NCBI GenBank assembly: GCA_028826165.1
Contig: JAPDFW010000056.1
Span: 310,001 to 374,000, forward strand
DNA: 64,000 nucleotides
Source: Anaeramoeba ignava BMAN
Lineage: Eukaryota; Protista; Anaeramoebae
Direction of reading: 5' to 3'
Part shown: positions 39,500 through 64,000 of the stretch, piece by piece
Position numbering within the stretch: position 1 is the first letter of the stretch
Layout of the letters: every line of letters starts with the position of its first letter
The notes under the pieces: model-generated
Seen by the model: the letters and a program-made list of their open reading frames with translations, nothing else
The model's database searches: none
What the model was told of the DNA's origin: nothing
Position numbers and translations under genes: made by a program

Positions 39500-39539
39500 T
39501 TCTTACAAAAACCAAAAATGAAAAATGAAAAATGAAAAA

Positions 39540-41225
39540 TTTAAAAAAGAAAAAAAAGAAGATTATTTGAAATTAATTATAGATTTTGTTTTATTTATTA
39601 TTTTAAAAATGGAAATAAACTTATTAATTATTTAATCTTATTTTCAAAAATTCAATTTTATTAATAAAAAAAATTAAATAAAAATTTAAAAAAGAAAAAA
39701 AAGAAGATTATTTGAAATTAATTATAGATTTTGTTTTATTTATTATTTTAAAAATGGAAATAAACTTATTAATTATTTAATCTTATTTTCAAAATTTAAT
39801 TTTGTTAATAAAAAAAATTGAATAAAAATTTAAAAAAGAAAAAAAAGAAGATTATTTAAAATTAATTATAGATTTTGTTTGATTTATTATTTTAAAAATG
39901 GAAATAAACTTATTAATTATTTAATCTTATTTTCAAAAATTTAATTTTATTAATAAAAAAATTGAATAAAAATTTAATTTATTTTTAAAAAGAAAATAAT
40001 AAATTAATTATAGATTTTGTTTTATTTATTATTTTAAAAATGGAAATTAACTTATTAATTATTTAATCTTGTTTTTAAAAATTTAATTTTATTAATAAAA
40101 ATTGAATAAAAATTTAATTTATTTTTAAAAAGAAAATAATAAATTAATTATAGATTTTGTTTTATTTATTATTTTAAAAATGGAAATTAACTTATTAATT
40201 ATTTAATCTTGTTTTTAAAAATTTAATTTTATTAATAAAAATTGAATAAAAATTTAATTTATTTTTAAAAAGAAATAATAATAAATTAATTATAGATTTT
40301 GTTTTATTTATTATTTTAAAAATGAAAATAAACTTATTAATTATTTAATCTTATTTTCAAAAATTCAATTTTATTAATAAAAAAATTGAATAAAAATTTA
40401 AAAAAGAAAAAAAAAGAAGATTATTTAAAATTAATTATAGATTTTGTTTTATTTATTATTTTAAAAATGGAAATAAACTTATTAATTATTTAATCTTGTT
40501 TTCAAAAATTTAATTTTATTAATAAAAAAATTGAATAAAAATTTAATTTATTTTTAAAAAGAAATAATAATAAATTAATTATAGATTTTGTTTTATTTAT
40601 TATTTTAAAAATGAAAATAAACTTATTAATTATTTAATCTTATTTTCAAAAATTCAATTTTATTAATAAAAAAATTGAATAAAAATTTAAAAAAGAAAAA
40701 AAAGAAGATTATTTAAAATTAATTATAGATTTTGTTTTATTTATTATTTTAAAAATGGAAATAAACTTATTAATTATTTAATCTTGTTTTCAAAAATTTA
40801 ATTTTATTAATAAAAATTGAATAAAAATTTAATTTATTTTTAAAAAGAAATAATAATAAATTAATTATAGATTTTGTTTTATTTATTATTTTAAAAATGG
40901 AAATAAACTTATTAATTATTTAATCTTGTTTTCAAAAATTTTGTTTTGTTAATAAAAAAATTGAATAAAAATTTAATTTATTTTTTAAAAATAAATAAAA
41001 TAAATTAATTATAGATTTTGTTTTATTTATTATTTTAAAAATGGAAATAAACTTATTAATTATTTAATCTTATTTTCAAAAATTTAATTTTATTAATAAA
41101 AATGAATAAAAATTTAAAAAAGAAAAAAAAGAAGATTATTTAAAATTAATTATAGATTTTGTTTTATTTATTATTTTAAAAATGGAAATAAACTTATTAA
41201 TTATTTAATCTTGTTTTTAAAAATT
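39540..41225. repeat. Minisatellite, unit about 140-145 bp, about 12 copies, two subtypes
   Basis: TAGATTTTG..AAAATGGAAATAAACTT recurs at about 39581, 39725, 39869, 40011, 40151, 40293, 40438, 40582, 40726, 40868, 41012, 41153. Confidence 0.9.
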
Positions 41226-41328
41226 TTGTTTTGATTTAAAATTTTGTTTTGATTTAAAATTTTGTTTTGATTTAAAATTCTTTTTTGATTTAAAATTCTG
41301 TTTTGATATAAAATTCTGCGTTTATTTT

Positions 41329-53997: not shown

Positions 53998-55062
53998 ATG
54001 TCAACTTCAAATCAAGAAAATAAAGATAAGAAAGATAAAAAAGATAAGAAAGATAAGAAAGATAAAAAAGATAAGAAAGATAAGAAAGATAAGAAAGATA
54101 AGAAAGATAAGAAAGATAAAGATAAAAAAGATAAAAAAGATAAGAAAGATAAAGATAAAGATAAGAAAGATAAGAAAGATAAGAAAGATAAGAAAGAAAA
54201 GAAAGATAAGAAAGGCAAAGAAAAGAAAGAAAAGAAAGATAAGAAAGGCAAAGATAAGAAAGAAAAGAAAGAAAATAAAGATAAAGATAAAGATAAGAAA
54301 GATAAGAAAGATAAGAAAGATAAAACAGAAAAGAAAGAAAAGAAAGAAAAGAAAGAAAAGAAAGATAAGAAAGATAAGAAAAAAAAGAAAGATAAAACAG
54401 ATAAAGTTGAAAAAGATAAAAAGGATAAAGAAATTATAAAATCAAATTCAAATCAAATCCAAAAATCAAATTCAAATCAAATCCAAAAATCAAATTCAAA
54501 TCAAATCCAAAAATCAAATCAAATCCAAAAATCAAACCAAATTCAAAAATCAAATCAAATTCAAAAATCAAATCAAATTCAAAAATCAAATCAAATTCAA
54601 ACACCAAAACCAAAACCAAAACCAAAACCAAAAATTAAACTCTCAGAAGAAGAACTTGAAAAACTTCGAACTGATTATCTTTCTGATTTGAAAACTTTTC
54701 TCAAAATAGAAGGATCAGTGGATTATTTCAAAAAATATTTATCTACTTTAATGGCTGAAGAAAATATTAATTTTTGGATTAAAACAGAAAATTTGAGAAA
54801 AATAATTTTACAACAAAGTAATAGTATATTTACAGAATTTATCAAAACAAACGCAGAAAATGAAATTATGATTGAACATGAAATTCGCCAAAAAATAACA
54901 GAAGAAATTGAAAAAGGAAATTATAATGTTCATTTATTTGATGAAGCTCAAGAGGCTGTTATTAATTTAATGGAAAAAGAAACTTTCCAAACTTTCCAAT
55001 TCACTGAATATGCTGATGATTTTTTAACTCAATTAAAAGCAAAACAATTGGAAAATAACTGA
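53998..55062 (+). CDS. RGS-domain protein with N-terminal (KKD)n low-complexity tract
   Basis: YFKKYL..AEENINFW..IFTEFIK..EIMI..LFDEAQEAVINLMEKETFQTF. Confidence 0.85.
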   Translation: MSTSNQENKDKKDKKDKKDKKDKKDKKDKKDKKDKKDKKDKDKKDKKDKKDKDKDKKDKKDKKDKKEKKDKKGKEKKEKKDKKGKDKKEKKENKDKDKDKKDKKDKKDKTEKKEKKEKKEKKDKKDKKKKKDKTDKVEKDKKDKEIIKSNSNQIQKSNSNQIQKSNSNQIQKSNQIQKSNQIQKSNQIQKSNQIQKSNQIQTPKPKPKPKPKIKLSEEELEKLRTDYLSDLKTFLKIEGSVDYFKKYLSTLMAEENINFWIKTENLRKIILQQSNSIFTEFIKTNAENEIMIEHEIRQKITEEIEKGNYNVHLFDEAQEAVINLMEKETFQTFQFTEYADDFLTQLKAKQLENN

Positions 55063-55205: not shown

Positions 55206-58200
55206 ATGGTAACGATTTATTTAATTAAAAAATACAAAAAAAAATTTCTTTCAATTTTTATATTTATATTTATATTTATATTTATTTTTATTTAAATTTA
55301 TAATAAAAAGAGTAACCAAAATCAAGGTAAATTTTATTTCATCTTTCTTTTTATTATGTAAAATTTGGAACTAAAAAAAAAATCATTTAAAATAATAAAT
55401 CAAAATAATGAAATAAATGGAGAAGAAGTTGAAATTCTTTCAAAAATATCACCTGAATTAGAACTTGATATGGGAGATCCAAAATGGACAAATAGAAGAG
55501 ATGCACTTCAATTAGTTTTAGAAGTATTAAATGTTCCAAAAATGGCTAAAGGAAATTACGATAAACTTGTTGAAATTTTAAGAAATGTTTTATCTAATGA
55601 TTCTAATTTAGTTGTTAGTGGAATTTGTATTCAATGTATTGAAAAATTAGCACTTGGATTAAGAAATGATTTCAAACAATATGTTAGTGGAATAATAACA
55701 CCATTATTTTATAAATTTAAAGAAAAAAAACTTGAAGAAGTAGTAACAAATACATTATTTTCAATGCATCCATATTGTTATGGATTAAATGATATTATTG
55801 AATGTAAATTTATTTTATTCTTTCATTTTTAAAATCAAAATTAAAATTTAAATTTAAAATCTAATAATAATAATAGCATTAACACAAGCAATTCAACACA
55901 GAACACCTAAAATAAGATCAGATACAATAACATGGCTTGGAAAATTATTTGGAAGATTAAGTAAATATGAAATTATCCAATCAATCAAACCATTAACAGA
56001 ATTATTATTCAAATCAGTTGATGATACAGTTCCAGCAGTTAGAGATGCAGCATCTAAAACAATTGGAGAAATGGTAACAATAACAGGAGATAAAGTTATT
56101 GAACCATTACTTTCAGAAATCAAACCACCAACAATCAAAAAAATTAAAAAGAATTATCCAAATCAAAATATATTAGATCAAGCAAATTCAACACCAGCTA
56201 TTCCAACAACATCAACACAACCAATTACTAAAGAAGATGAACAAGAAGAAATTCAAGAATCTAAACCAACAAAACAATCAAAAAAGAAACCAATAAAATC
56301 AACCAAACAGAAAACCAAAAAGAAAACAGAAACCAATATTGAATCAAATGAAAATTTAAATCAATCTCAACAACAAAATATTCCAATAATAAATCAAAAT
56401 AATGAAATAACTGGAGAAGAAGTTGAAATTCTTTCAAAAATATCACCTGAATTAGAACTTGATATGGGAGATCCAAAATGGACAAATAGAAGAGATGCAC
56501 TTCAATTAGTTTTAGAAGTATTAAATGTTCCAAAAATGGCTAAAGGAAATTACGATAAACTTGTTGAAATTTTAAGAAATGTTTTATCTAATGATTCTAA
56601 TTTAGTTGTGAGTGGAATTTGTATTCAATGTATTGAAAAATTAGCACTTGGATTAAGAAATGATTTTAAACAATATGTTAGTGGAATAATAACACCATTA
56701 TTTTACAAATTTAAAGAAAAAAAACTTGAAGAAGTAGTAACAAATACATTATTTTCAATGCATCCAAATTGTTATGAATTAAATGATATTATTGAATGTA
56801 AATTTATTTTATTCTTTCATTTTTAAAATTAAAATTAAAATTAAAATTAAAAATTCAAAATTAAAATTAAAATAATAATTAAAATTAAATCAAATAATAA
56901 TAATAATAGCATTAACACAAGCAATTCAACATAGAACACCTAAAATAAGATCAGATACAATAACATGGCTTGGAAAATTATTTGGAAGATTAAGTAAATA
57001 TGAAATTCTTCAATCAATCAAACCAATAACAGAATTATTATTCAAATCAGTTGATGATACAGTTCCAGCAGTTAGAGATGCAGCATCTAAAACAATTGGA
57101 GAAATGGTAACAATAACAGGAGATAAAGTTATTGAACCATTACTTTCAGAAATCAAACCACCAACAATCAAAAAAATTAAAAAGAATTATCCAAATCAAA
57201 ATATATTAGATCAAGCAAATTCAACACCAAATGATTCAAAAACAACATCATTTATTCCAACATCAACACCAACAACATCAACACAACCAATTACTAAAGA
57301 AGATGAACAAGAAGAAATTCAAGAATCTAAACCAACAAAACAATCAAAAAAGAAACCAACAAAATCAACCAAAGCAAAACCATCAAGAAAAATTCCAAAA
57401 ACAGAAAAATATTCTTTAGAAACCAATATTGAATCAAATGAAAATGCAAATGAAAATTTAAATCAATCTCAACAACAAAATATTCCAATAACAAATCAAA
57501 ATAATGAAATAAATGGAGAAGAAGTTGAAATTCTTTCAAAAATATCACCTGAATTAGAACTTGATATGGGAGATCCAAAATGGGCAAATAGAAGAGATGC
57601 ACTTCAATCTGTTTTAGAAGTATTAAATGTTCCAAAAATGGCTAAAGGAAATTACGATAAACTTGTTGAAATTTTAAGAAATGTTTTATCTAATGATTCT
57701 AATTTAGTTGTTAGTGGAATTTGTATTCAATGTATTGAAAAATTAGCACTTGGATTAAGAAATGATTTTAAACAATATGCTAGTGGAATAATAACACCAT
57801 TATTTTACAAATTTAAAGAAAAAAAACTTGAAGAAGTAGTAACAAATACATTATTTTCAATGCATCCAAATTGTTATGAATTAAATGATATTATTGAATG
57901 TAAATTTATTTTATTCTTTCATTTTTAAAATTAAAATTAAAATTATAATTAAAATTAAAATTAAAATTAAAATTCAAATTATAATTAAAATTAAAATTAT
58001 AATTAAAATTAAAATTAAAATTAAAATTAAAATTAAAATTAAAATTAAAATCAAAATCAAATCAAATAATAATAATAATAGCATTAACACAAGCAATTCA
58101 ACATAGAACACCTAAAATAAGATCAGATACAATAACATGGCTTGGAAAATTATTTGGAAGATTAAGTAAATATGAAATTCTTCAATCAATCAAACCATTA

Positions 58201-61200
58201 ACAGAATTATTATTCAAATCAGTTGATGATACAGTTCCAGCAGTTAGAGATGCAGCATCTAAAACAATTGGAGAAATGGTAACAATAACAGGAGATAAAG
58301 TTATTGAACCATTACTTTCAGAAATCAAACCACCAACAATCAAAAAAATTAAAAAGAATTATCCAAATCAAAATATATTAGATCAAGCAAATTCAATACC
58401 AAATGATTCAAAAACAACATCATTTATTCCAACATCAACACTAACAACATCAACACAACCAATTACTAAAGAAGATGAAAAAGAAGAAGTTCAAGAATCT
58501 AAACCAACAAAACAATCAAAAAAGAAACCAACAAAATCAACCAAAGCAAAACCATCAAGAAAAATTCCAAAAACAGAAAAATATTCTTTAGAAACCAATA
58601 TTGAATCAAATGAAAATGCAAATGAAAATTTAAATCAATCTCAACAACAAAATATTCCAATAACAAATCAAAATAATGAAATAAATGGAGAAGAAGTTGA
58701 AATTCTTTCAAAAATATCACCTGAATTAGAACTTGATATGGGAGATCCAAAATGGACAAATAGAAGAGATGCACTTCAATTAGTTTTAGAAGTATTAAAT
58801 GTTCCAAAAATGGCTAAAGGAAATTACGATAAACTTGTTGAAATTTTAAGAAATGTTTTATCTAATGATTCTAATTTAGTTGTTAGTGGAATTTGTATTC
58901 AATGTATTGAAAAATTAGCACTTGGATTAAGAAATGATTTCAAACAATATGTTAGTGGAATAATAACACCATTATTTTATAAATTTAAAGAAAAAAAACT
59001 TGAAGAAGTAGTAACAAATACATTATTTTCAATGCATCCAAATTGTTATGAATTAAATGATATTATTGAATGTAAATTTATTTTATTCTTTCATTTTTAA
59101 AATTAAAATTAAAATTAAAATTAAAATTAAAATTAAAATAATAATAGCATTAACACAAGCAATTCAACATAGAACACCTAAAATAAGATCAGATACAATA
59201 ACATGGCTTGGAAAATTATTTGGAAGATTAAGTAAATATGAAATTCTTCAATCAATCAAACCAATAACAGAATTATTATTCAAATCAGTTGATGATACAG
59301 TTCCAGCAGTTAGAGATGCAGCATCTAAAACAATTGGAGAAATGGTAACAATAACTGGAGATAAAGTTATTGAACCATTACTTTCAGAAATCAAACCACC
59401 AACAATCAAAAAAATTAAAAAGAATTATCCAAATCAAAATATATTAGATCAAGCAAATTCAACACCAAATGATTCAAAAACAACATCATTTATTCCAACA
59501 TCAACACCAACAACATCAACACAACCAATTATTATAGAAGATGAACAAGAAGAAGTTCAAGAATCTAAACCAACAAAACAATCAAAAAAGAAACCAACAA
59601 AATCAACCAAACAGAAAACCAAAAAGAAAACAGAAACCAATATTGAATCAAATGAAAATGCAAATGAAAATTTAAATCAATCTCAACAAAAAAATATTCC
59701 AATAACAAATCAAAATAATGAAATAAATGGAGAAGAAGTTGAAATTCTTTCAAAAATATCACCTGAATTAGAACTTGATATGGGAGATCCAAAATGGACA
59801 AATAGAAGAGATGCACTTCAATTAGTTTTAGAAGTATTAAATGTTCCAAAAATGGCTAAAGGAAATTATGATAAACTTGTTGAAATTTTAAGAAATGTTT
59901 TATCTAATGATTCTAATTTAGTTGTTAGTGGAATTTGTATTCAATGTATTGAAAAATTAGCACTTGGATTAAGAAATGATTTCAAACAATATGTTAGTGG
60001 AATAATAACACCATTATTTTATAAATTTAAAGAAAAAAAACTTGAAGAAGTAGTAACAAATACATTATTTTCAATGCATCCAAATTGTTATGAATTAAAT
60101 GATATTATTGAATGTAAATTTATTTTATTCTTTCATTTTTAAAATTAAAATTAAAATTAAAATTAAAATTAAAATTAAAATAATAATAGCATTAACACAA
60201 GCAATTCAACACAGAACACCTAAAATAAGATCAGATACAATAACATGGCTTGGAAAATTATTTGGAAGATTAAGTAAATATGAAATTCTTCAATCAATCA
60301 AACCATTAACAGAATTATTATTCAAATCAGTTGATGATACAGTTCCAGCAGTTAGAGATGCAGCATCTAAAACAATTGGAGAAATGGTAACAATAACTGG
60401 AGATAAAGTTATTGAACCATTACTTTCAGAAATCAAACCACCAACAATCAAAAAAATTAAAAAGAATTATCCAAATCAAAATATATTAGATCAAGCAAAT
60501 TCAACACCAGTTAGTTCAAAAACAACATCATTTATTCCAACATCAACACCAACAACATCAACACAACCAATTATTATAGAAGATGAACAAGAAGATGAAA
60601 AAGATGATCAGAATGAAACTAATATTAATGAGGATAATGAACAAAAAAAGCAACCACCTAAAAAACAAACAACTAAAAAAACTACAAAAATAACCAAAAA
60701 ATCAACTGCTAAAAACCCAAAGAAAACACAAACAAAAACAAAACCATCACAAAATAAAAAAGAAGAAAAACCAAAACCAACACCAACAACAACAAATGAA
60801 AATACAGGCTTTGATCCATTATCATTAGTTGATCCAGTTGATGTTCTCTCTAAAATACCAACTGATCTTGAAGAAAACATGAAAGAACATAAATGGACAA
60901 TTAGAAGAGATGCACTTCAATCTGTTTTAGAAGTATTAAATGTTCAAAAAATGGCTAAAGGAAGTTATGATAAACTTGTTGAACTTTTAACTAATACTTT
61001 ATCCAGTGATTCTAATTTAGTTGTAAATGGAATTTGTATTCAATGTATTGAAAAATTAGCACTTGGATTAAGAAATGATTTCAAACCATATTATGCTCCA
61101 CTTATACCATTATTATTCTTTAAATTTAAAGAAAAAAAACTTGAAGAAGCAGTAACAAATGCGTTATTTTCAATGCATCCATATTGTTATGGATTAAATG

Positions 61201-64000
61201 ATATTATGGAACGTAAATTTATTTTATTAAATTTATTAATTTAAAATCAAAATTAAAATTAAAAATAAAAATAATCAATAGAATTAACTGAAGCAATTCA
61301 ACATAAAACACCTAAAATAAGATCAGATACAATAACATGGCTTGGAAAATTATTTGCAAAATTAAAAAAATATGAAATTATTCAATCAATCAAAACAATA
61401 ACAGAATTATTATTCAAAGCAGTTGATGATACAGTTCCAGCAGTTAGAGATGCAGCATCTAAAGCTATTGGAGAAATGGTAACAATAACAGGAGATAAAG
61501 TTATTGAACCATTACTTTCAGAAATCAACCCAACTACACTTAAAAAAATCAAAAAGAATTATCCAAATCAAAGTATATTAGATCAAGCAAATTCAACACC
61601 AGTTGAAATTCCAGTTGCAGAAAAAAAACAAACAAAATCAAAAAGTACTAAAAAAACAAAAGGAGCAAACAAAGCAAAAACAAAAACAAAAGGAAAAGGA
61701 AAAGGAGGGAAAACAAAGGGAAAAACAACGAAAACAAATCAGAAACCGAAGAAAGAAGCAACGAAAAAAGCGAAATCACCTTCTGTCGACAATCAACCAA
61801 TAGACAACGCAAATATTGATGATGATTTCGTTGTTGATGATTCAAATGTTCCTGTATTAGATTCAGTTAAATCTAAATGGGAAGAGATGATTCCCCAGTC
61901 AACCCGCGAGGATTTAGAGAGTTCGAAATGGAAAGAACGTGTTTCGGGTGTTGATGAATGTGACGAGATTTTCAGTGGATTTGACGCAAACAAAACAACA
62001 GAGAATTTTGGAATAATTTTCCGCGGACTTGAAAATATTTTCCACGATCCAAATATTCAAGTGATGCAAAAATCATTGAAATGTTTCCAGAAATTATTAT
62101 ATAAAACAAAGAGAGTATCGCGAGCAATTCTTCCCGAATTCATTCCGCAGGTGATCAACAAAATATCCGATCCAAAATTAAAAACGACCATTTTCGAAGT
62201 TCTTACTAGTTTAACGGAAATATTCACAACCCAAAAAATTTTCCAGAATATTTACGAACCAGCACTTAGCCATAAGAGCCCTAAAGTATTAACAGAAGTG
62301 CTAAATTGGATTAATACAGCACTTCTTGAATTCGGGACGCCGACTCTTGATGTGAAAGGATTCCTTGAATTCATCAAAAAATGTTTTGGTAACACAAATC
62401 CACTTGTGAAGAAAGCTGCTCTTGATGTTGTTCATACATCTCGTTTGTATTTTGGCGAATCAATTCGCGTTGTTTTTGAAGAGCTCAGTCCTTCAATATT
62501 GAAAACAATTGATGCCACAATCGAAAAAGCTTCAAAAGCACAAGTACCAACACCAACAAAAACAATGAGAATTCCTAAAGAATCGCCGAAAAAACAAGAA
62601 TCCAAAAAACCGAAGAAAACTTCGAAATCAAAAACATCAGGAAAATCGAAAGCAAAACCAAAAGCAAAACCAAAAGCGAAACCAAAAGCGAAAGCAAAAA
62701 CAACGAAAAAACCGCAAAAAGGCAAAGCGGAACCAGCACCACAGCAAAATTCGCAACAACAAATTGACGAAGAGTTGGTGAATCTTTTGAAATCCAAGGA
62801 TTGGAAAATGCGACAAAAAGCACTTGAAACATTGCAATCAATTTTCAAATCATGCACAGAAAAAACATCTTTTCCGTTTCAAACGGAAATATTTGAATTA
62901 TTAAAAGGACGGTTATCAGAAACAAACAAAAACCTAGTGGTTGTAGTAATCCAAACACTTGAAGCGATAGCAGTGCCTAGCGGGAGCGATCTGAAGCCAC
63001 ATGTAGGAACGATTATGCCTATTGTGCTAACGAATTTCAACGACAAAAAACCGAACATGCGGGAGGCAGTGAGACTGTGTCTGAATGAATGGACAAAACA
63101 AATAGGATTCGATGATTTCCTCCCGATTATTCCTGAAGGACTCAGCTCGCTCAAACTGTCGGAGGCGCGCCAAGACATGTGTGAGTGGATTGCGGCCAGT
63201 ATTCCCACTGTCAAAAAAGCGGATCTTCTCATCCCGATAATGAAACCCATCTTTTTATGTGCCGAGGATAGACTCGCAGGCACAAGAAAAGCTGCTGAGG
63301 ATTCGATCCGAGAAATGATTCTCCAGATCGGCCATAAAAAAATCGCAATCCAAATGGATGGTCTTAAACCAACTACACAGCGCACTATAAATTCTATTCT
63401 TGAAAAATATGCGGATTTGAAACCCATTAAAAAAGAACCCGCAAAAGGAAAGAAACCAAGGAAAAAAAAAGAAGAAACAAACCAGAACAGAAAAAAATCA
63501 CCTGTCAAAAAAAAGGGAAAATCAACAAAAACAAAATCAACAACTGGAAAATCAAAAGCGAAATCAACGAATAAATCAAAAAAGGAGGACAATTCCAACG
63601 CGCAAAACACTGCAGACAGCGAGACAGGAATTTTGAAGATGATCAAAAACGGGAAGAAGAAAAGAGAGGAGCAAATCCACCAAAACAGGTTCAGTGTGGA
63701 AGATTCAAAGAAGGTGCAGGAATTCTTCGATTGGATAAGAGAAGCTGCCAAACTGCTTGTAGAAGAATCTGTCCACGAGCTTCTTTTCTCAGCCAACTTC
63801 AAACTTTTCATCAAGGGAATTGATGCAGTACAAAAATCGATCCAAACACAACCGAAAACAGTGCTTGAAACAGTCGACATTTTCTTCTCGTTTTCAGCAA
63901 TTCGTCTTCATGAAGGAAACATGACGGGATCGATTAAGGTGCTTGAGTTTCTTGTTGAGCTATTTAAATACTTATCAGCAAGCACTTATCAGTTGACAGA
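55206..64000 (+). CDS. CKAP5: XMAP215/ch-TOG/Dis1 microtubule polymerase with expanded TOG array; 5' end uncertain, 3' end beyond window
   Basis: Six copies of VEILSKI..KWT.RRDAL..DSNLVV..LALGLRNDF..KFKEKK (TOG2-type), then an open frame from 61282 with SSKWKERV (TOG3), SKDWKMRQKAL (TOG4) and LLFSANFK..VDIFFSF..KVLEFL (TOG5). Confidence 0.9.
55395..61600 (+). repeat. Intragenic tandem duplication of about 1.0-1.2 kb (exon + intron), 6 units
   Basis: Equivalent intron donors at 55804, 56798, 57900, 59072, 60114, 61213. Confidence 0.95.

What the first reader, a model, noticed from the sequence alone, without database searches (positions are those of the whole stretch)
55206..64000. XMAP215 microtubule polymerase rebuilt with six tandem TOG2 domains (at least 9 TOGs, no TOG1)
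Seen: five near-identical TOG units and one diverged unit, each keeping the tubulin-contact Trp (KWT.RR) and the KEKK loop and separated by basic/Thr-rich linkers, followed by single TOG3-, TOG4- and TOG5-like domains. Known: XMAP215 proteins carry 2 (yeast), 3 (nematode) or 5 TOGs, and TOG1+TOG2 bind free tubulin to drive polymerisation. Inference: TOG2 (unit 6 is the likely ancestor, with the FDPLSLVDPVDVLSKIP lead-in) was recently amplified, replacing TOG1 and multiplying tubulin-loading sites. This may be an undescribed polymerase architecture. Units differ in linkers and intron lengths, which argues against a simple assembly duplication.
Basis: partly seen in the sequence, partly recalled or inferred. 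Interest (0 to 1): 0.85.

Follow-up and report, generated by a model that had tools for sequence, protein, structure and literature searches.

The report
Microtubule polymerase with six TOG2 domains
In the anaerobic amoeba Anaeramoeba ignava, the gene for XMAP215, the protein that speeds microtubule growth, has lost its usual first tubulin-catching domain and carries six tandem copies of the second; doubling of that domain is known from nematodes, six copies were not found elsewhere, and neither the copy number nor expression could be checked with reads.

Summary
Observation confirmed. The XMAP215 gene of Anaeramoeba ignava BMAN opens with six TOG domains, each split by the same phase-1 intron; the spliced frame is open, then TOG3-TOG4-TOG5 and the C-terminal region follow. 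Class HMMs, a tree and an AU test make all six TOG2; the genome has no conserved TOG1, only a degenerate one in a second, eroded paralog. Unit 6 is the ancestral-like copy. Units 1-5 come from an older duplicate (21% aa diverged) and were then amplified or homogenised (0.4-1.6% nt). Tubulin-contact Trp, Arg and KEKK are kept. Corrections: TOG2 replacing TOG1 is not new (nematode ZYG-9 is TOG2-TOG2-TOG5; engineered Stu2 TOG2-TOG2 works); linkers 1-4 are net neutral, not basic; amplification had two steps. New is a (TOG2)6-3-4-5 chain, absent from 265 homologues and from papers searched. Likely a multi-site tubulin-catching antenna; neutral expansion is a close rival. The scan had noted this same stretch, not other DNA.

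The parts
55206..55208 (+). Predicted start codon (one-codon first exon), followed by a predicted intron 55209-55310
   Evidence: No in-frame ATG lies upstream of unit 1 without splicing; this path gives an open frame. Prediction only.
55311..55326 (+). Predicted 16-nt micro-exon; then a phase-1 intron from 55327 to one of three in-frame acceptors (55422, 55425, 55428)
   Evidence: All three acceptors keep the frame into unit 1. The acceptors are GAG or AAG, not the TAG of the array introns. A fallback ATG lies at 55470 inside unit 1.
55422..56166 (+). Unit 1, TOG2 (A-type); intron 55804-55876
   Evidence: TOG2 HMM 183 bits vs TOG1 26
56167..56415 (+). Linker 1, 83 aa, Thr/Gln/Asn-rich, net neutral
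56416..57199 (+). Unit 2, TOG2 (A-type); intron 56798-56909
   Evidence: TOG2 183 vs TOG1 28 bits
57200..57517 (+). Linker 2, 106 aa; carries a coding block shared only with linker 3
57518..58371 (+). Unit 3, TOG2 (A-type); intron 57900-58081
   Evidence: TOG2 187 vs TOG1 28 bits
58372..58689 (+). Linker 3, 106 aa; four substitutions from linker 2
58690..59437 (+). Unit 4, TOG2 (A-type); intron 59072-59147
   Evidence: TOG2 183 vs TOG1 28 bits
59438..59731 (+). Linker 4, 98 aa
59732..60479 (+). Unit 5, TOG2 (A-type); intron 60114-60189
   Evidence: TOG2 184 vs TOG1 27 bits
60480..60830 (+). Linker 5, 117 aa; its second half is unique, has no Met and ends in the TOG2 lead-in motif (FDPxxLxDP); probably the remnant of the TOG1-TOG2 linker
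   Evidence: lead-in matches Msps and Alp14 TOG2. Its origin is inference.
60831..61571 (+). Unit 6, ancestral-like TOG2; intron 61213-61281
   Evidence: TOG2 218 vs TOG1 34 bits; shorter branch; closer to TOG2 consensus at 32 vs 10 sites
61572..61859 (+). Basic linker after TOG2 (K+R 23, D+E 11)
61860..62570 (+). TOG3
   Evidence: TOG3 HMM 193 bits; PF21041; 4y5j E 2e-23
62739..63428 (+). TOG4, flanked by strongly basic linkers (net +20 before, +22 after)
   Evidence: TOG4 HMM 154 bits; 4qmi E 1.5e-27
63660..64000 (+). N-terminal part of TOG5; the gene continues beyond the window through TOG5 and the C-terminal region to G000:C57:376169, across two +1 frameshifts
   Evidence: TOG5 HMM 201 bits read with X at the break; blastx to canonical C-termini

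Best explanation
This is the main XMAP215 microtubule polymerase of Anaeramoeba ignava, about 3,390 aa, laid out as (TOG2)x6-TOG3-TOG4-TOG5-C-terminal region. SHOWN: domain identities, open spliced frame, no conserved TOG1 in the assembly, retained contact residues, eroded second paralog. INFERRED history: a copy of the TOG2 segment with its intron took the place of TOG1, drifted about 21% from the parent, and was then amplified to five copies and kept alike by unequal crossing-over and gene conversion; each internal exon is a multiple of three, so gains and losses keep the frame. INFERRED mechanism, from work on Stu2 and XMAP215: the basic linkers after unit 6, TOG3 and TOG4 hold the protein on the lattice at the plus end, and the six flexibly tethered TOG2 domains each catch one curved free tubulin and hand it to the tip. 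One chain would then carry six high-affinity-type sites instead of two (Stu2 dimer: four). The gain is probably less than proportional, because the distal, drifted copies are far from the anchor and may bind more weakly.
For: All six units score 183-218 bits as TOG2 vs 26-34 as TOG1; they sit inside TOG2 with 100/100 support, and joining units 1 and 4 to TOG1 is rejected, p-AU 0.003. The paralog's TOG2 has a phase-1 intron at the same codon. A TOG1 profile finds only this gene's TOG3 in the genome. The HEAT-A Trp, HEAT-E Arg, HEAT-B D-x-N and HEAT-C KEKK are kept in every unit. For a real array: coding indels between units are 33, 24 and 12 nt, all in frame; four different A-to-A linkers; 7 of 15 variable core sites synonymous (p 0.02); longest exact match between units 376 nt; short-read runs hold 0.69 of words, above the 0.48 ceiling for no A-type unit. 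The paralog's TOG2 has lost the Trp and keeps 21 of 40 conserved columns. Stu2 TOG2-TOG2 is nearly wild-type (PMC5999394); Vmax = kt x N, said to apply to monomers (PMC13541299).
Against: The word share 0.69 equals the 0.70 ceiling for a single A-type unit. The start codon needs two predicted introns with a non-TAG acceptor. Two +1 frameshifts lie in the 3' part. Units 1-5 have drifted from the TOG2 consensus and lost the lead-in motif. An artificial Msps TOG1-2-1-2 array did not beat TOG1-2 (Currie 2011 as cited in PMC4142611). No other Anaeramoeba orthologue was retrieved to date the event.
Confidence: 0.55

Rival explanations
1. Real but functionally neutral expansion. One TOG2 copy replaced TOG1, as in nematodes; the further copies are tolerated products of unequal crossing-over in a repeat-prone genome, and the protein works like an ordinary two-site polymerase.
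For: Symmetric exons make gains harmless to the frame. The window has 204 tandem-repeat rows. A-type units drifted from consensus faster than unit 6, 32 vs 10 sites, p 0.001. Msps TOG1-2-1-2 gave no gain. Near-identical TOG2 doublings also occur in a tick and a plant-nematode gene model.
Against: All main contact residues are kept in five copies; synonymous excess among copies; in Stu2, activity scales with TOG number.
Confidence: 0.25
2. Copy number inflated by the assembly. The nanopore assembler strung allelic or noisy versions of a shorter array (two to four TOG2) head to tail, and short-read polishing mixed them.
For: The assembly is an early ABruijn nanopore build polished with Pilon and shows residual +1 errors in the same gene. 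Variant sites are mosaic (21 of 45 informative pairs incompatible), which polishing could also cause. The best short-read share, 0.69, sits at the single-A ceiling. Ploidy is unknown.
Against: The A-to-A linker cannot exist with a single A unit. Four different such linkers need at least three A units per haplotype in a diploid. Linkers 2 and 3 share a coherent in-frame coding block that read noise would not create. The array is only 6.2 kb. Logan contigs drop near-identical variants, which would also lower the share.
Confidence: 0.13
3. The array serves mainly as a tubulin store or nucleation aid at the acentriolar MTOC, or as a long spacer, not as a faster polymerase.
For: Anaeramoeba has an acentriolar centrosome with radiating microtubules (PMC11550330). 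The XMAP215 C-terminal region binds gamma-TuRC (PMC13376574) and a homologous region is present. TOG-bound tubulins weaken lattice binding (PMC5999394).
Against: No localisation or biochemical data; the roles are not exclusive; TOG6 identity was not confirmed.
Confidence: 0.05
4. The gene is a decaying or partly expressed copy: truncated in TOG5 by a real frameshift, or lacking a working start.
For: Two +1 shifts at C57:~374250 and ~375709; a speculative 5' end.
Against: Both shifts, and the one in the paralog, are single extra bases in short runs, typical of nanopore consensus. About 8 kb of frame is open. The only other XMAP215 is more eroded, and the family is essential in the organisms tested (established knowledge).
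Confidence: 0.02

Closest known systems
XMAP215 / ch-TOG (CKAP5) / Msps / MOR1 pentameric (hexameric with TOG6) polymerases
   Same: TOG2-TOG3-TOG4-TOG5 order, basic inter-TOG linkers, homologous C-terminal region, conserved intra-HEAT contact residues
   Different: No TOG1; six TOG2 in tandem (nine TOGs, ten if TOG6 is counted); about 3,390 aa instead of about 2,000; two-residue deletion after KEKK shared with the paralog
Nematode ZYG-9 (TOG2-TOG2-TOG5)
   Same: TOG1 absent and replaced by a TOG2 copy (PMC5461023; note PMC4142611 instead calls the first two TOG1-like)
   Different: ZYG-9 has two TOG2 and lost TOG3 and TOG4; here there are six and TOG3-4 stay. Independent origin: one clade with nematode domains rejected, p-AU 0.015
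Engineered Stu2(TOG2-TOG2) and Msps TOG1-2-1-2
   Same: All-TOG2 or multiplied N-terminal arrays; the first is active, the second gave no gain
   Different: Artificial, at most four sites; this one is natural, probably monomeric, six sites in series
Other TOG2-multiplied gene models: Ditylenchus destructor KAI1694976.1 (2-2-2-2), Dermacentor albipictus XP_070385371.1 (2-2-5), C. elegans TOD-2
   Same: Tandem TOG2 copies, 97% identical in the first two
   Different: None keeps TOG3-4-5 behind the array; the Ditylenchus model ends in a forkhead fragment and may be a fusion artefact; neither database model was verified

Membership tests
XMAP215/Dis1 polymerases | N-terminal array of TOG (six-HEAT) domains | tested here: met
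   PF21041, PDB matches, class HMMs
XMAP215/Dis1 polymerases | Conserved intra-HEAT tubulin contacts (HEAT-A Trp, HEAT-E Arg, KEKK, D-x-N) in the N-terminal TOGs | tested here: met
   Kept in all six units; HEAT-D Lys is Arg in units 1-5
XMAP215/Dis1 polymerases | Basic lattice-binding region next to the TOG array | tested here: met
   Net +12, +20, +22 in the linkers after unit 6, TOG3 and TOG4; composition only
XMAP215/Dis1 polymerases | Conserved C-terminal region (TOG6 and helix bundle) | tested here: inconclusive
   blastx to canonical C-termini at 22-24% identity; no PDB match beyond the end of TOG5
XMAP215/Dis1 polymerases | Binds free tubulin and speeds plus-end growth | not testable with these tools
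   Needs biochemistry
Canonical pentameric layout (TOG1-2-3-4-5) | TOG1 at the N-terminus | tested here: not met
Canonical pentameric layout (TOG1-2-3-4-5) | One each of TOG2, 3, 4, 5 in order | tested here: not met
   Order kept, but TOG2 is present six times
ZYG-9-type layout (TOG2-TOG2-TOG5) | TOG1 replaced by a TOG2 duplicate | tested here: met
ZYG-9-type layout (TOG2-TOG2-TOG5) | Loss of TOG3 and TOG4; common origin with the nematode duplication | tested here: not met
   TOG3 and TOG4 present; shared clade rejected, p-AU 0.015
CLASP or Crescerin TOG arrays | Best similarity to CLASP or Crescerin TOGs | tested here: not met
   XMAP215 TOG structures score far higher than CLASP 4g3a (E 4e-7) or Crescerin 5dn7 (E 4e-5)

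The most novel reading that the evidence does not exclude
The six-copy array is real, spliced into one monomeric protein, and all six TOG2 load tubulin. It would be the largest natural XMAP215 loading array known and a natural case of raising polymerase output by domain number, possibly tunable by in-frame exon skipping or copy-number change.
Probability: 0.3. Interest if true: 0.68.

Novelty: new variant of a known kind. Interest (0 to 1): 0.5.

Why it matters
Why XMAP215 proteins differ in TOG number is stated as open (PMC5461023). The tethered-delivery model predicts activity proportional to the number of loading TOGs however they are linked (PMC13541299), whereas a model that needs an ordered TOG1-TOG2 pair does not. 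A natural chain with six TOG2 and no TOG1 tests this beyond the four sites studied so far. It is also a second, independent loss of TOG1 by TOG2 duplication, in a metamonad with an acentriolar MTOC. The effect is modest: the domain swap has precedent, and similar arrays can be engineered.

Tried and rejected
There is therefore no depth, junction or RNA evidence; no listed run is on record as RNA. Following the operators' note, external searches went exon by exon by reference and the joined spliced model was used only in local scripts; no whole TOG2 unit has a reference, so no structure was predicted. Three homologous-protein searches, the representative search and exact look-ups returned no Anaeramoeba protein, so the layout in A. 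flamelloides or A. pumila is unknown. An alignment of fragments from several TOGs (A2) misaligned and was dropped. P0126 looked like a TOG1-less protein, but its contig carries TOG-domain gene fragments just upstream. Rejected: units 1-5 as TOG1; a TOG1 exon upstream (only 360 nt between the RGS stop and unit 1; no HMM hit); positive selection from dN/dS about 0.8 between A-type and unit 6, because GC3 is 5-9% and synonymous change is restricted. The C1 PF21041 hit is not XMAP215-like in my searches and was not pursued. Trees used LG+G4 without the mixture model, a subset of 10-14 canonical proteins, and TOG5 was left out.
Full report
Source. The window is G000:C57:310001-374000 of a 42,843,398-base, 147-contig assembly. 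These figures match Table S1 for Anaeramoeba ignava BMAN in PMC11550330 exactly. That assembly was built from nanopore reads with ABruijn and polished with Racon, Nanopolish and Pilon; its modal intron length is 76 nt.

Observation. Six TOG units begin at 55422, 56416, 57518, 58690, 59732 and 60831. Each core is 672 coding nt and is split at the same codon by a phase-1 GT-AG intron of 73, 112, 182, 76, 76 and 69 nt. Removing the introns gives 2,682 codons without a stop to the window end. Internal exons are 921, 990, 990, 966 and 1,023 nt, all multiples of three. Units 1-5 (A-type) differ by 3-11 nt; unit 6 differs from them by 77-79 nt and 45-48 of 224 residues. TOG3, TOG4 and TOG5 follow. 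The gene continues outside the window to C57:376169, with a C-terminal region homologous to canonical XMAP215. Two single extra bases in short runs (C57:~374250 in TOG5 and ~375709) shift the frame; the paralog has a similar one. I read them as probable nanopore consensus errors, unverified. The start is predicted only: ATG 55206, a 16-nt micro-exon, and three in-frame acceptors at 55422-55428. The full product would be about 3,390 aa.

Identity of the units. HMMs for TOG1 to TOG5, built from 35 canonical proteins, score the units at 183-218 bits as TOG2 and 26-34 as TOG1. In two trees they form one clade inside TOG2; forcing units 1 and 4 with TOG1 is rejected (p-AU 0.003). The best solved match is Msps TOG2 (2qk2). 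The second XMAP215 gene of this genome (C126:~270860-277320, minus) has a phase-1 intron at the same codon of its TOG2, an independent marker. A TOG1 profile finds only this gene's TOG3 in the genome and nothing upstream in the window; the RGS gene stops 360 nt before unit 1. The paralog has a degenerate TOG1 (45 bits; groups with TOG1 on a very long branch), and its TOG2 has lost the Trp and keeps 21 of 40 conserved columns, against 30 for unit 6 and 27 for unit 4. The array gene is thus the only XMAP215 here with intact TOG2 contacts.

History. Unit 6 keeps the TOG2 lead-in motif, adjoins TOG3, has the shorter branch (0.05-0.09 vs 0.16-0.17), and carries the commoner TOG2 residue at 32 sites against 10 for the A-type (p 0.001). 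Linker 5 has a unique second half with no Met, which I infer to be the old TOG1-TOG2 linker. A TOG2 copy therefore took TOG1's place, drifted, and was later amplified. Variants among units 1-5 are mosaic (21 of 45 informative pairs incompatible) and several minor alleles equal unit 6, as expected from unequal crossing-over and conversion, though polishing could mimic this.

Is the array real? For: coding indels between units are 33, 24 and 12 nt; 7 of 15 variable core sites are synonymous against 21% expected (p 0.02, weak); no two units share more than 376 identical bases. The A-to-A linker cannot exist with one A unit. There are four different ones, which need at least three A units per haplotype in a diploid, so at least four TOG2 in all. 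Short-read runs hold up to 0.69 of sampled words, above the 0.48 ceiling for a gene without any A unit. Against, or open: 0.69 equals the 0.70 ceiling for one A unit, although contig-based indexes drop near-identical variants. My estimates: at least four TOG2 real, about 0.87; exactly six, about 0.7.

Mechanism. The HEAT-A Trp and HEAT-E Arg that contact tubulin in Stu2 TOG2 (W341, R519; PMC4145800) are kept in all units, with KEKK and D-x-N. Linkers 1-4 are neutral tethers of 83-106 aa; positive charge is concentrated after unit 6, TOG3 and TOG4. [quoted passage not shown] Vmax equals transfer rate times TOG number, a model its authors extend to monomers (PMC13541299). The most likely reading is a plus-end-anchored antenna with up to six loading sites. 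It is inferred, not shown. An artificial Msps TOG1-2-1-2 did not beat TOG1-2 (cited in PMC4142611), and the A-type copies have drifted, so neutral expansion remains a close rival.

Comparison and novelty. ZYG-9 is described as TOG2-TOG2-TOG5-like (PMC5461023; PMC4142611 calls its first two TOG1-like). My HMMs and trees support the TOG2 reading, so loss of TOG1 by TOG2 duplication is known; the two events are independent (p-AU 0.015). Among 265 retrieved homologues none has more than one TOG2 in front of TOG3-4-5; the largest TOG2 run is four, in a doubtful Ditylenchus gene model. Paper searches found no larger array. The survey is limited to top hits and open papers, and no other Anaeramoeba orthologue was retrieved. 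External searches were run exon by exon; the joined model was neither searched nor folded. Verdict: a real-looking new variant of a known family, interest 0.5.

Noticed in passing
G000:C126:~270860-277320, minus (L019:1865-8321): Second XMAP215 paralog with the full 1-2-3-4-5 layout but heavily eroded: TOG2 lacks the Trp, TOG1 is barely recognisable and has a candidate 96-nt intron, an N-terminal Asn/Ser repeat, and one +1 frameshift in TOG3.
   Followed up: partly
window 55422-64000 and L020:3199-4785: Strong codon-composition gradient along the gene: GC3 5-9% in the six TOG2 units, 30-43% in TOG3-5, up to 63% in the C-terminal region. The paralog shows a weaker rise. Unexplained.
   Followed up: partly
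all six units and paralog TOG2: Two-residue deletion right after the KEKK (KDKR) loop relative to canonical TOG2, shared by both genes.
   Followed up: no
window 53998-55062, plus: Intronless RGS-domain gene (PF00615, E 3e-17) with a long Lys/Asp repeat N-terminus, ending 143 nt before the predicted XMAP215 start.
   Followed up: no
G000:C1:400732-401118, minus (L023): Another TOG-family gene (PF21041, 42 bits), possibly CLASP-like.
   Followed up: no
P0007 (Dermacentor albipictus XP_070385371.1) and P0010 (Logan SRR25685064): TOG2-TOG2 layouts outside the nematode clade of the tree, 97% and 81% identical within each pair; TOG2 doubling seems to recur in animals. Not verified against reads.
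   Followed up: partly
window 39535-41226: Tandem array of a 144-bp AT-rich unit, about 12 copies at 91% identity.
   Followed up: no
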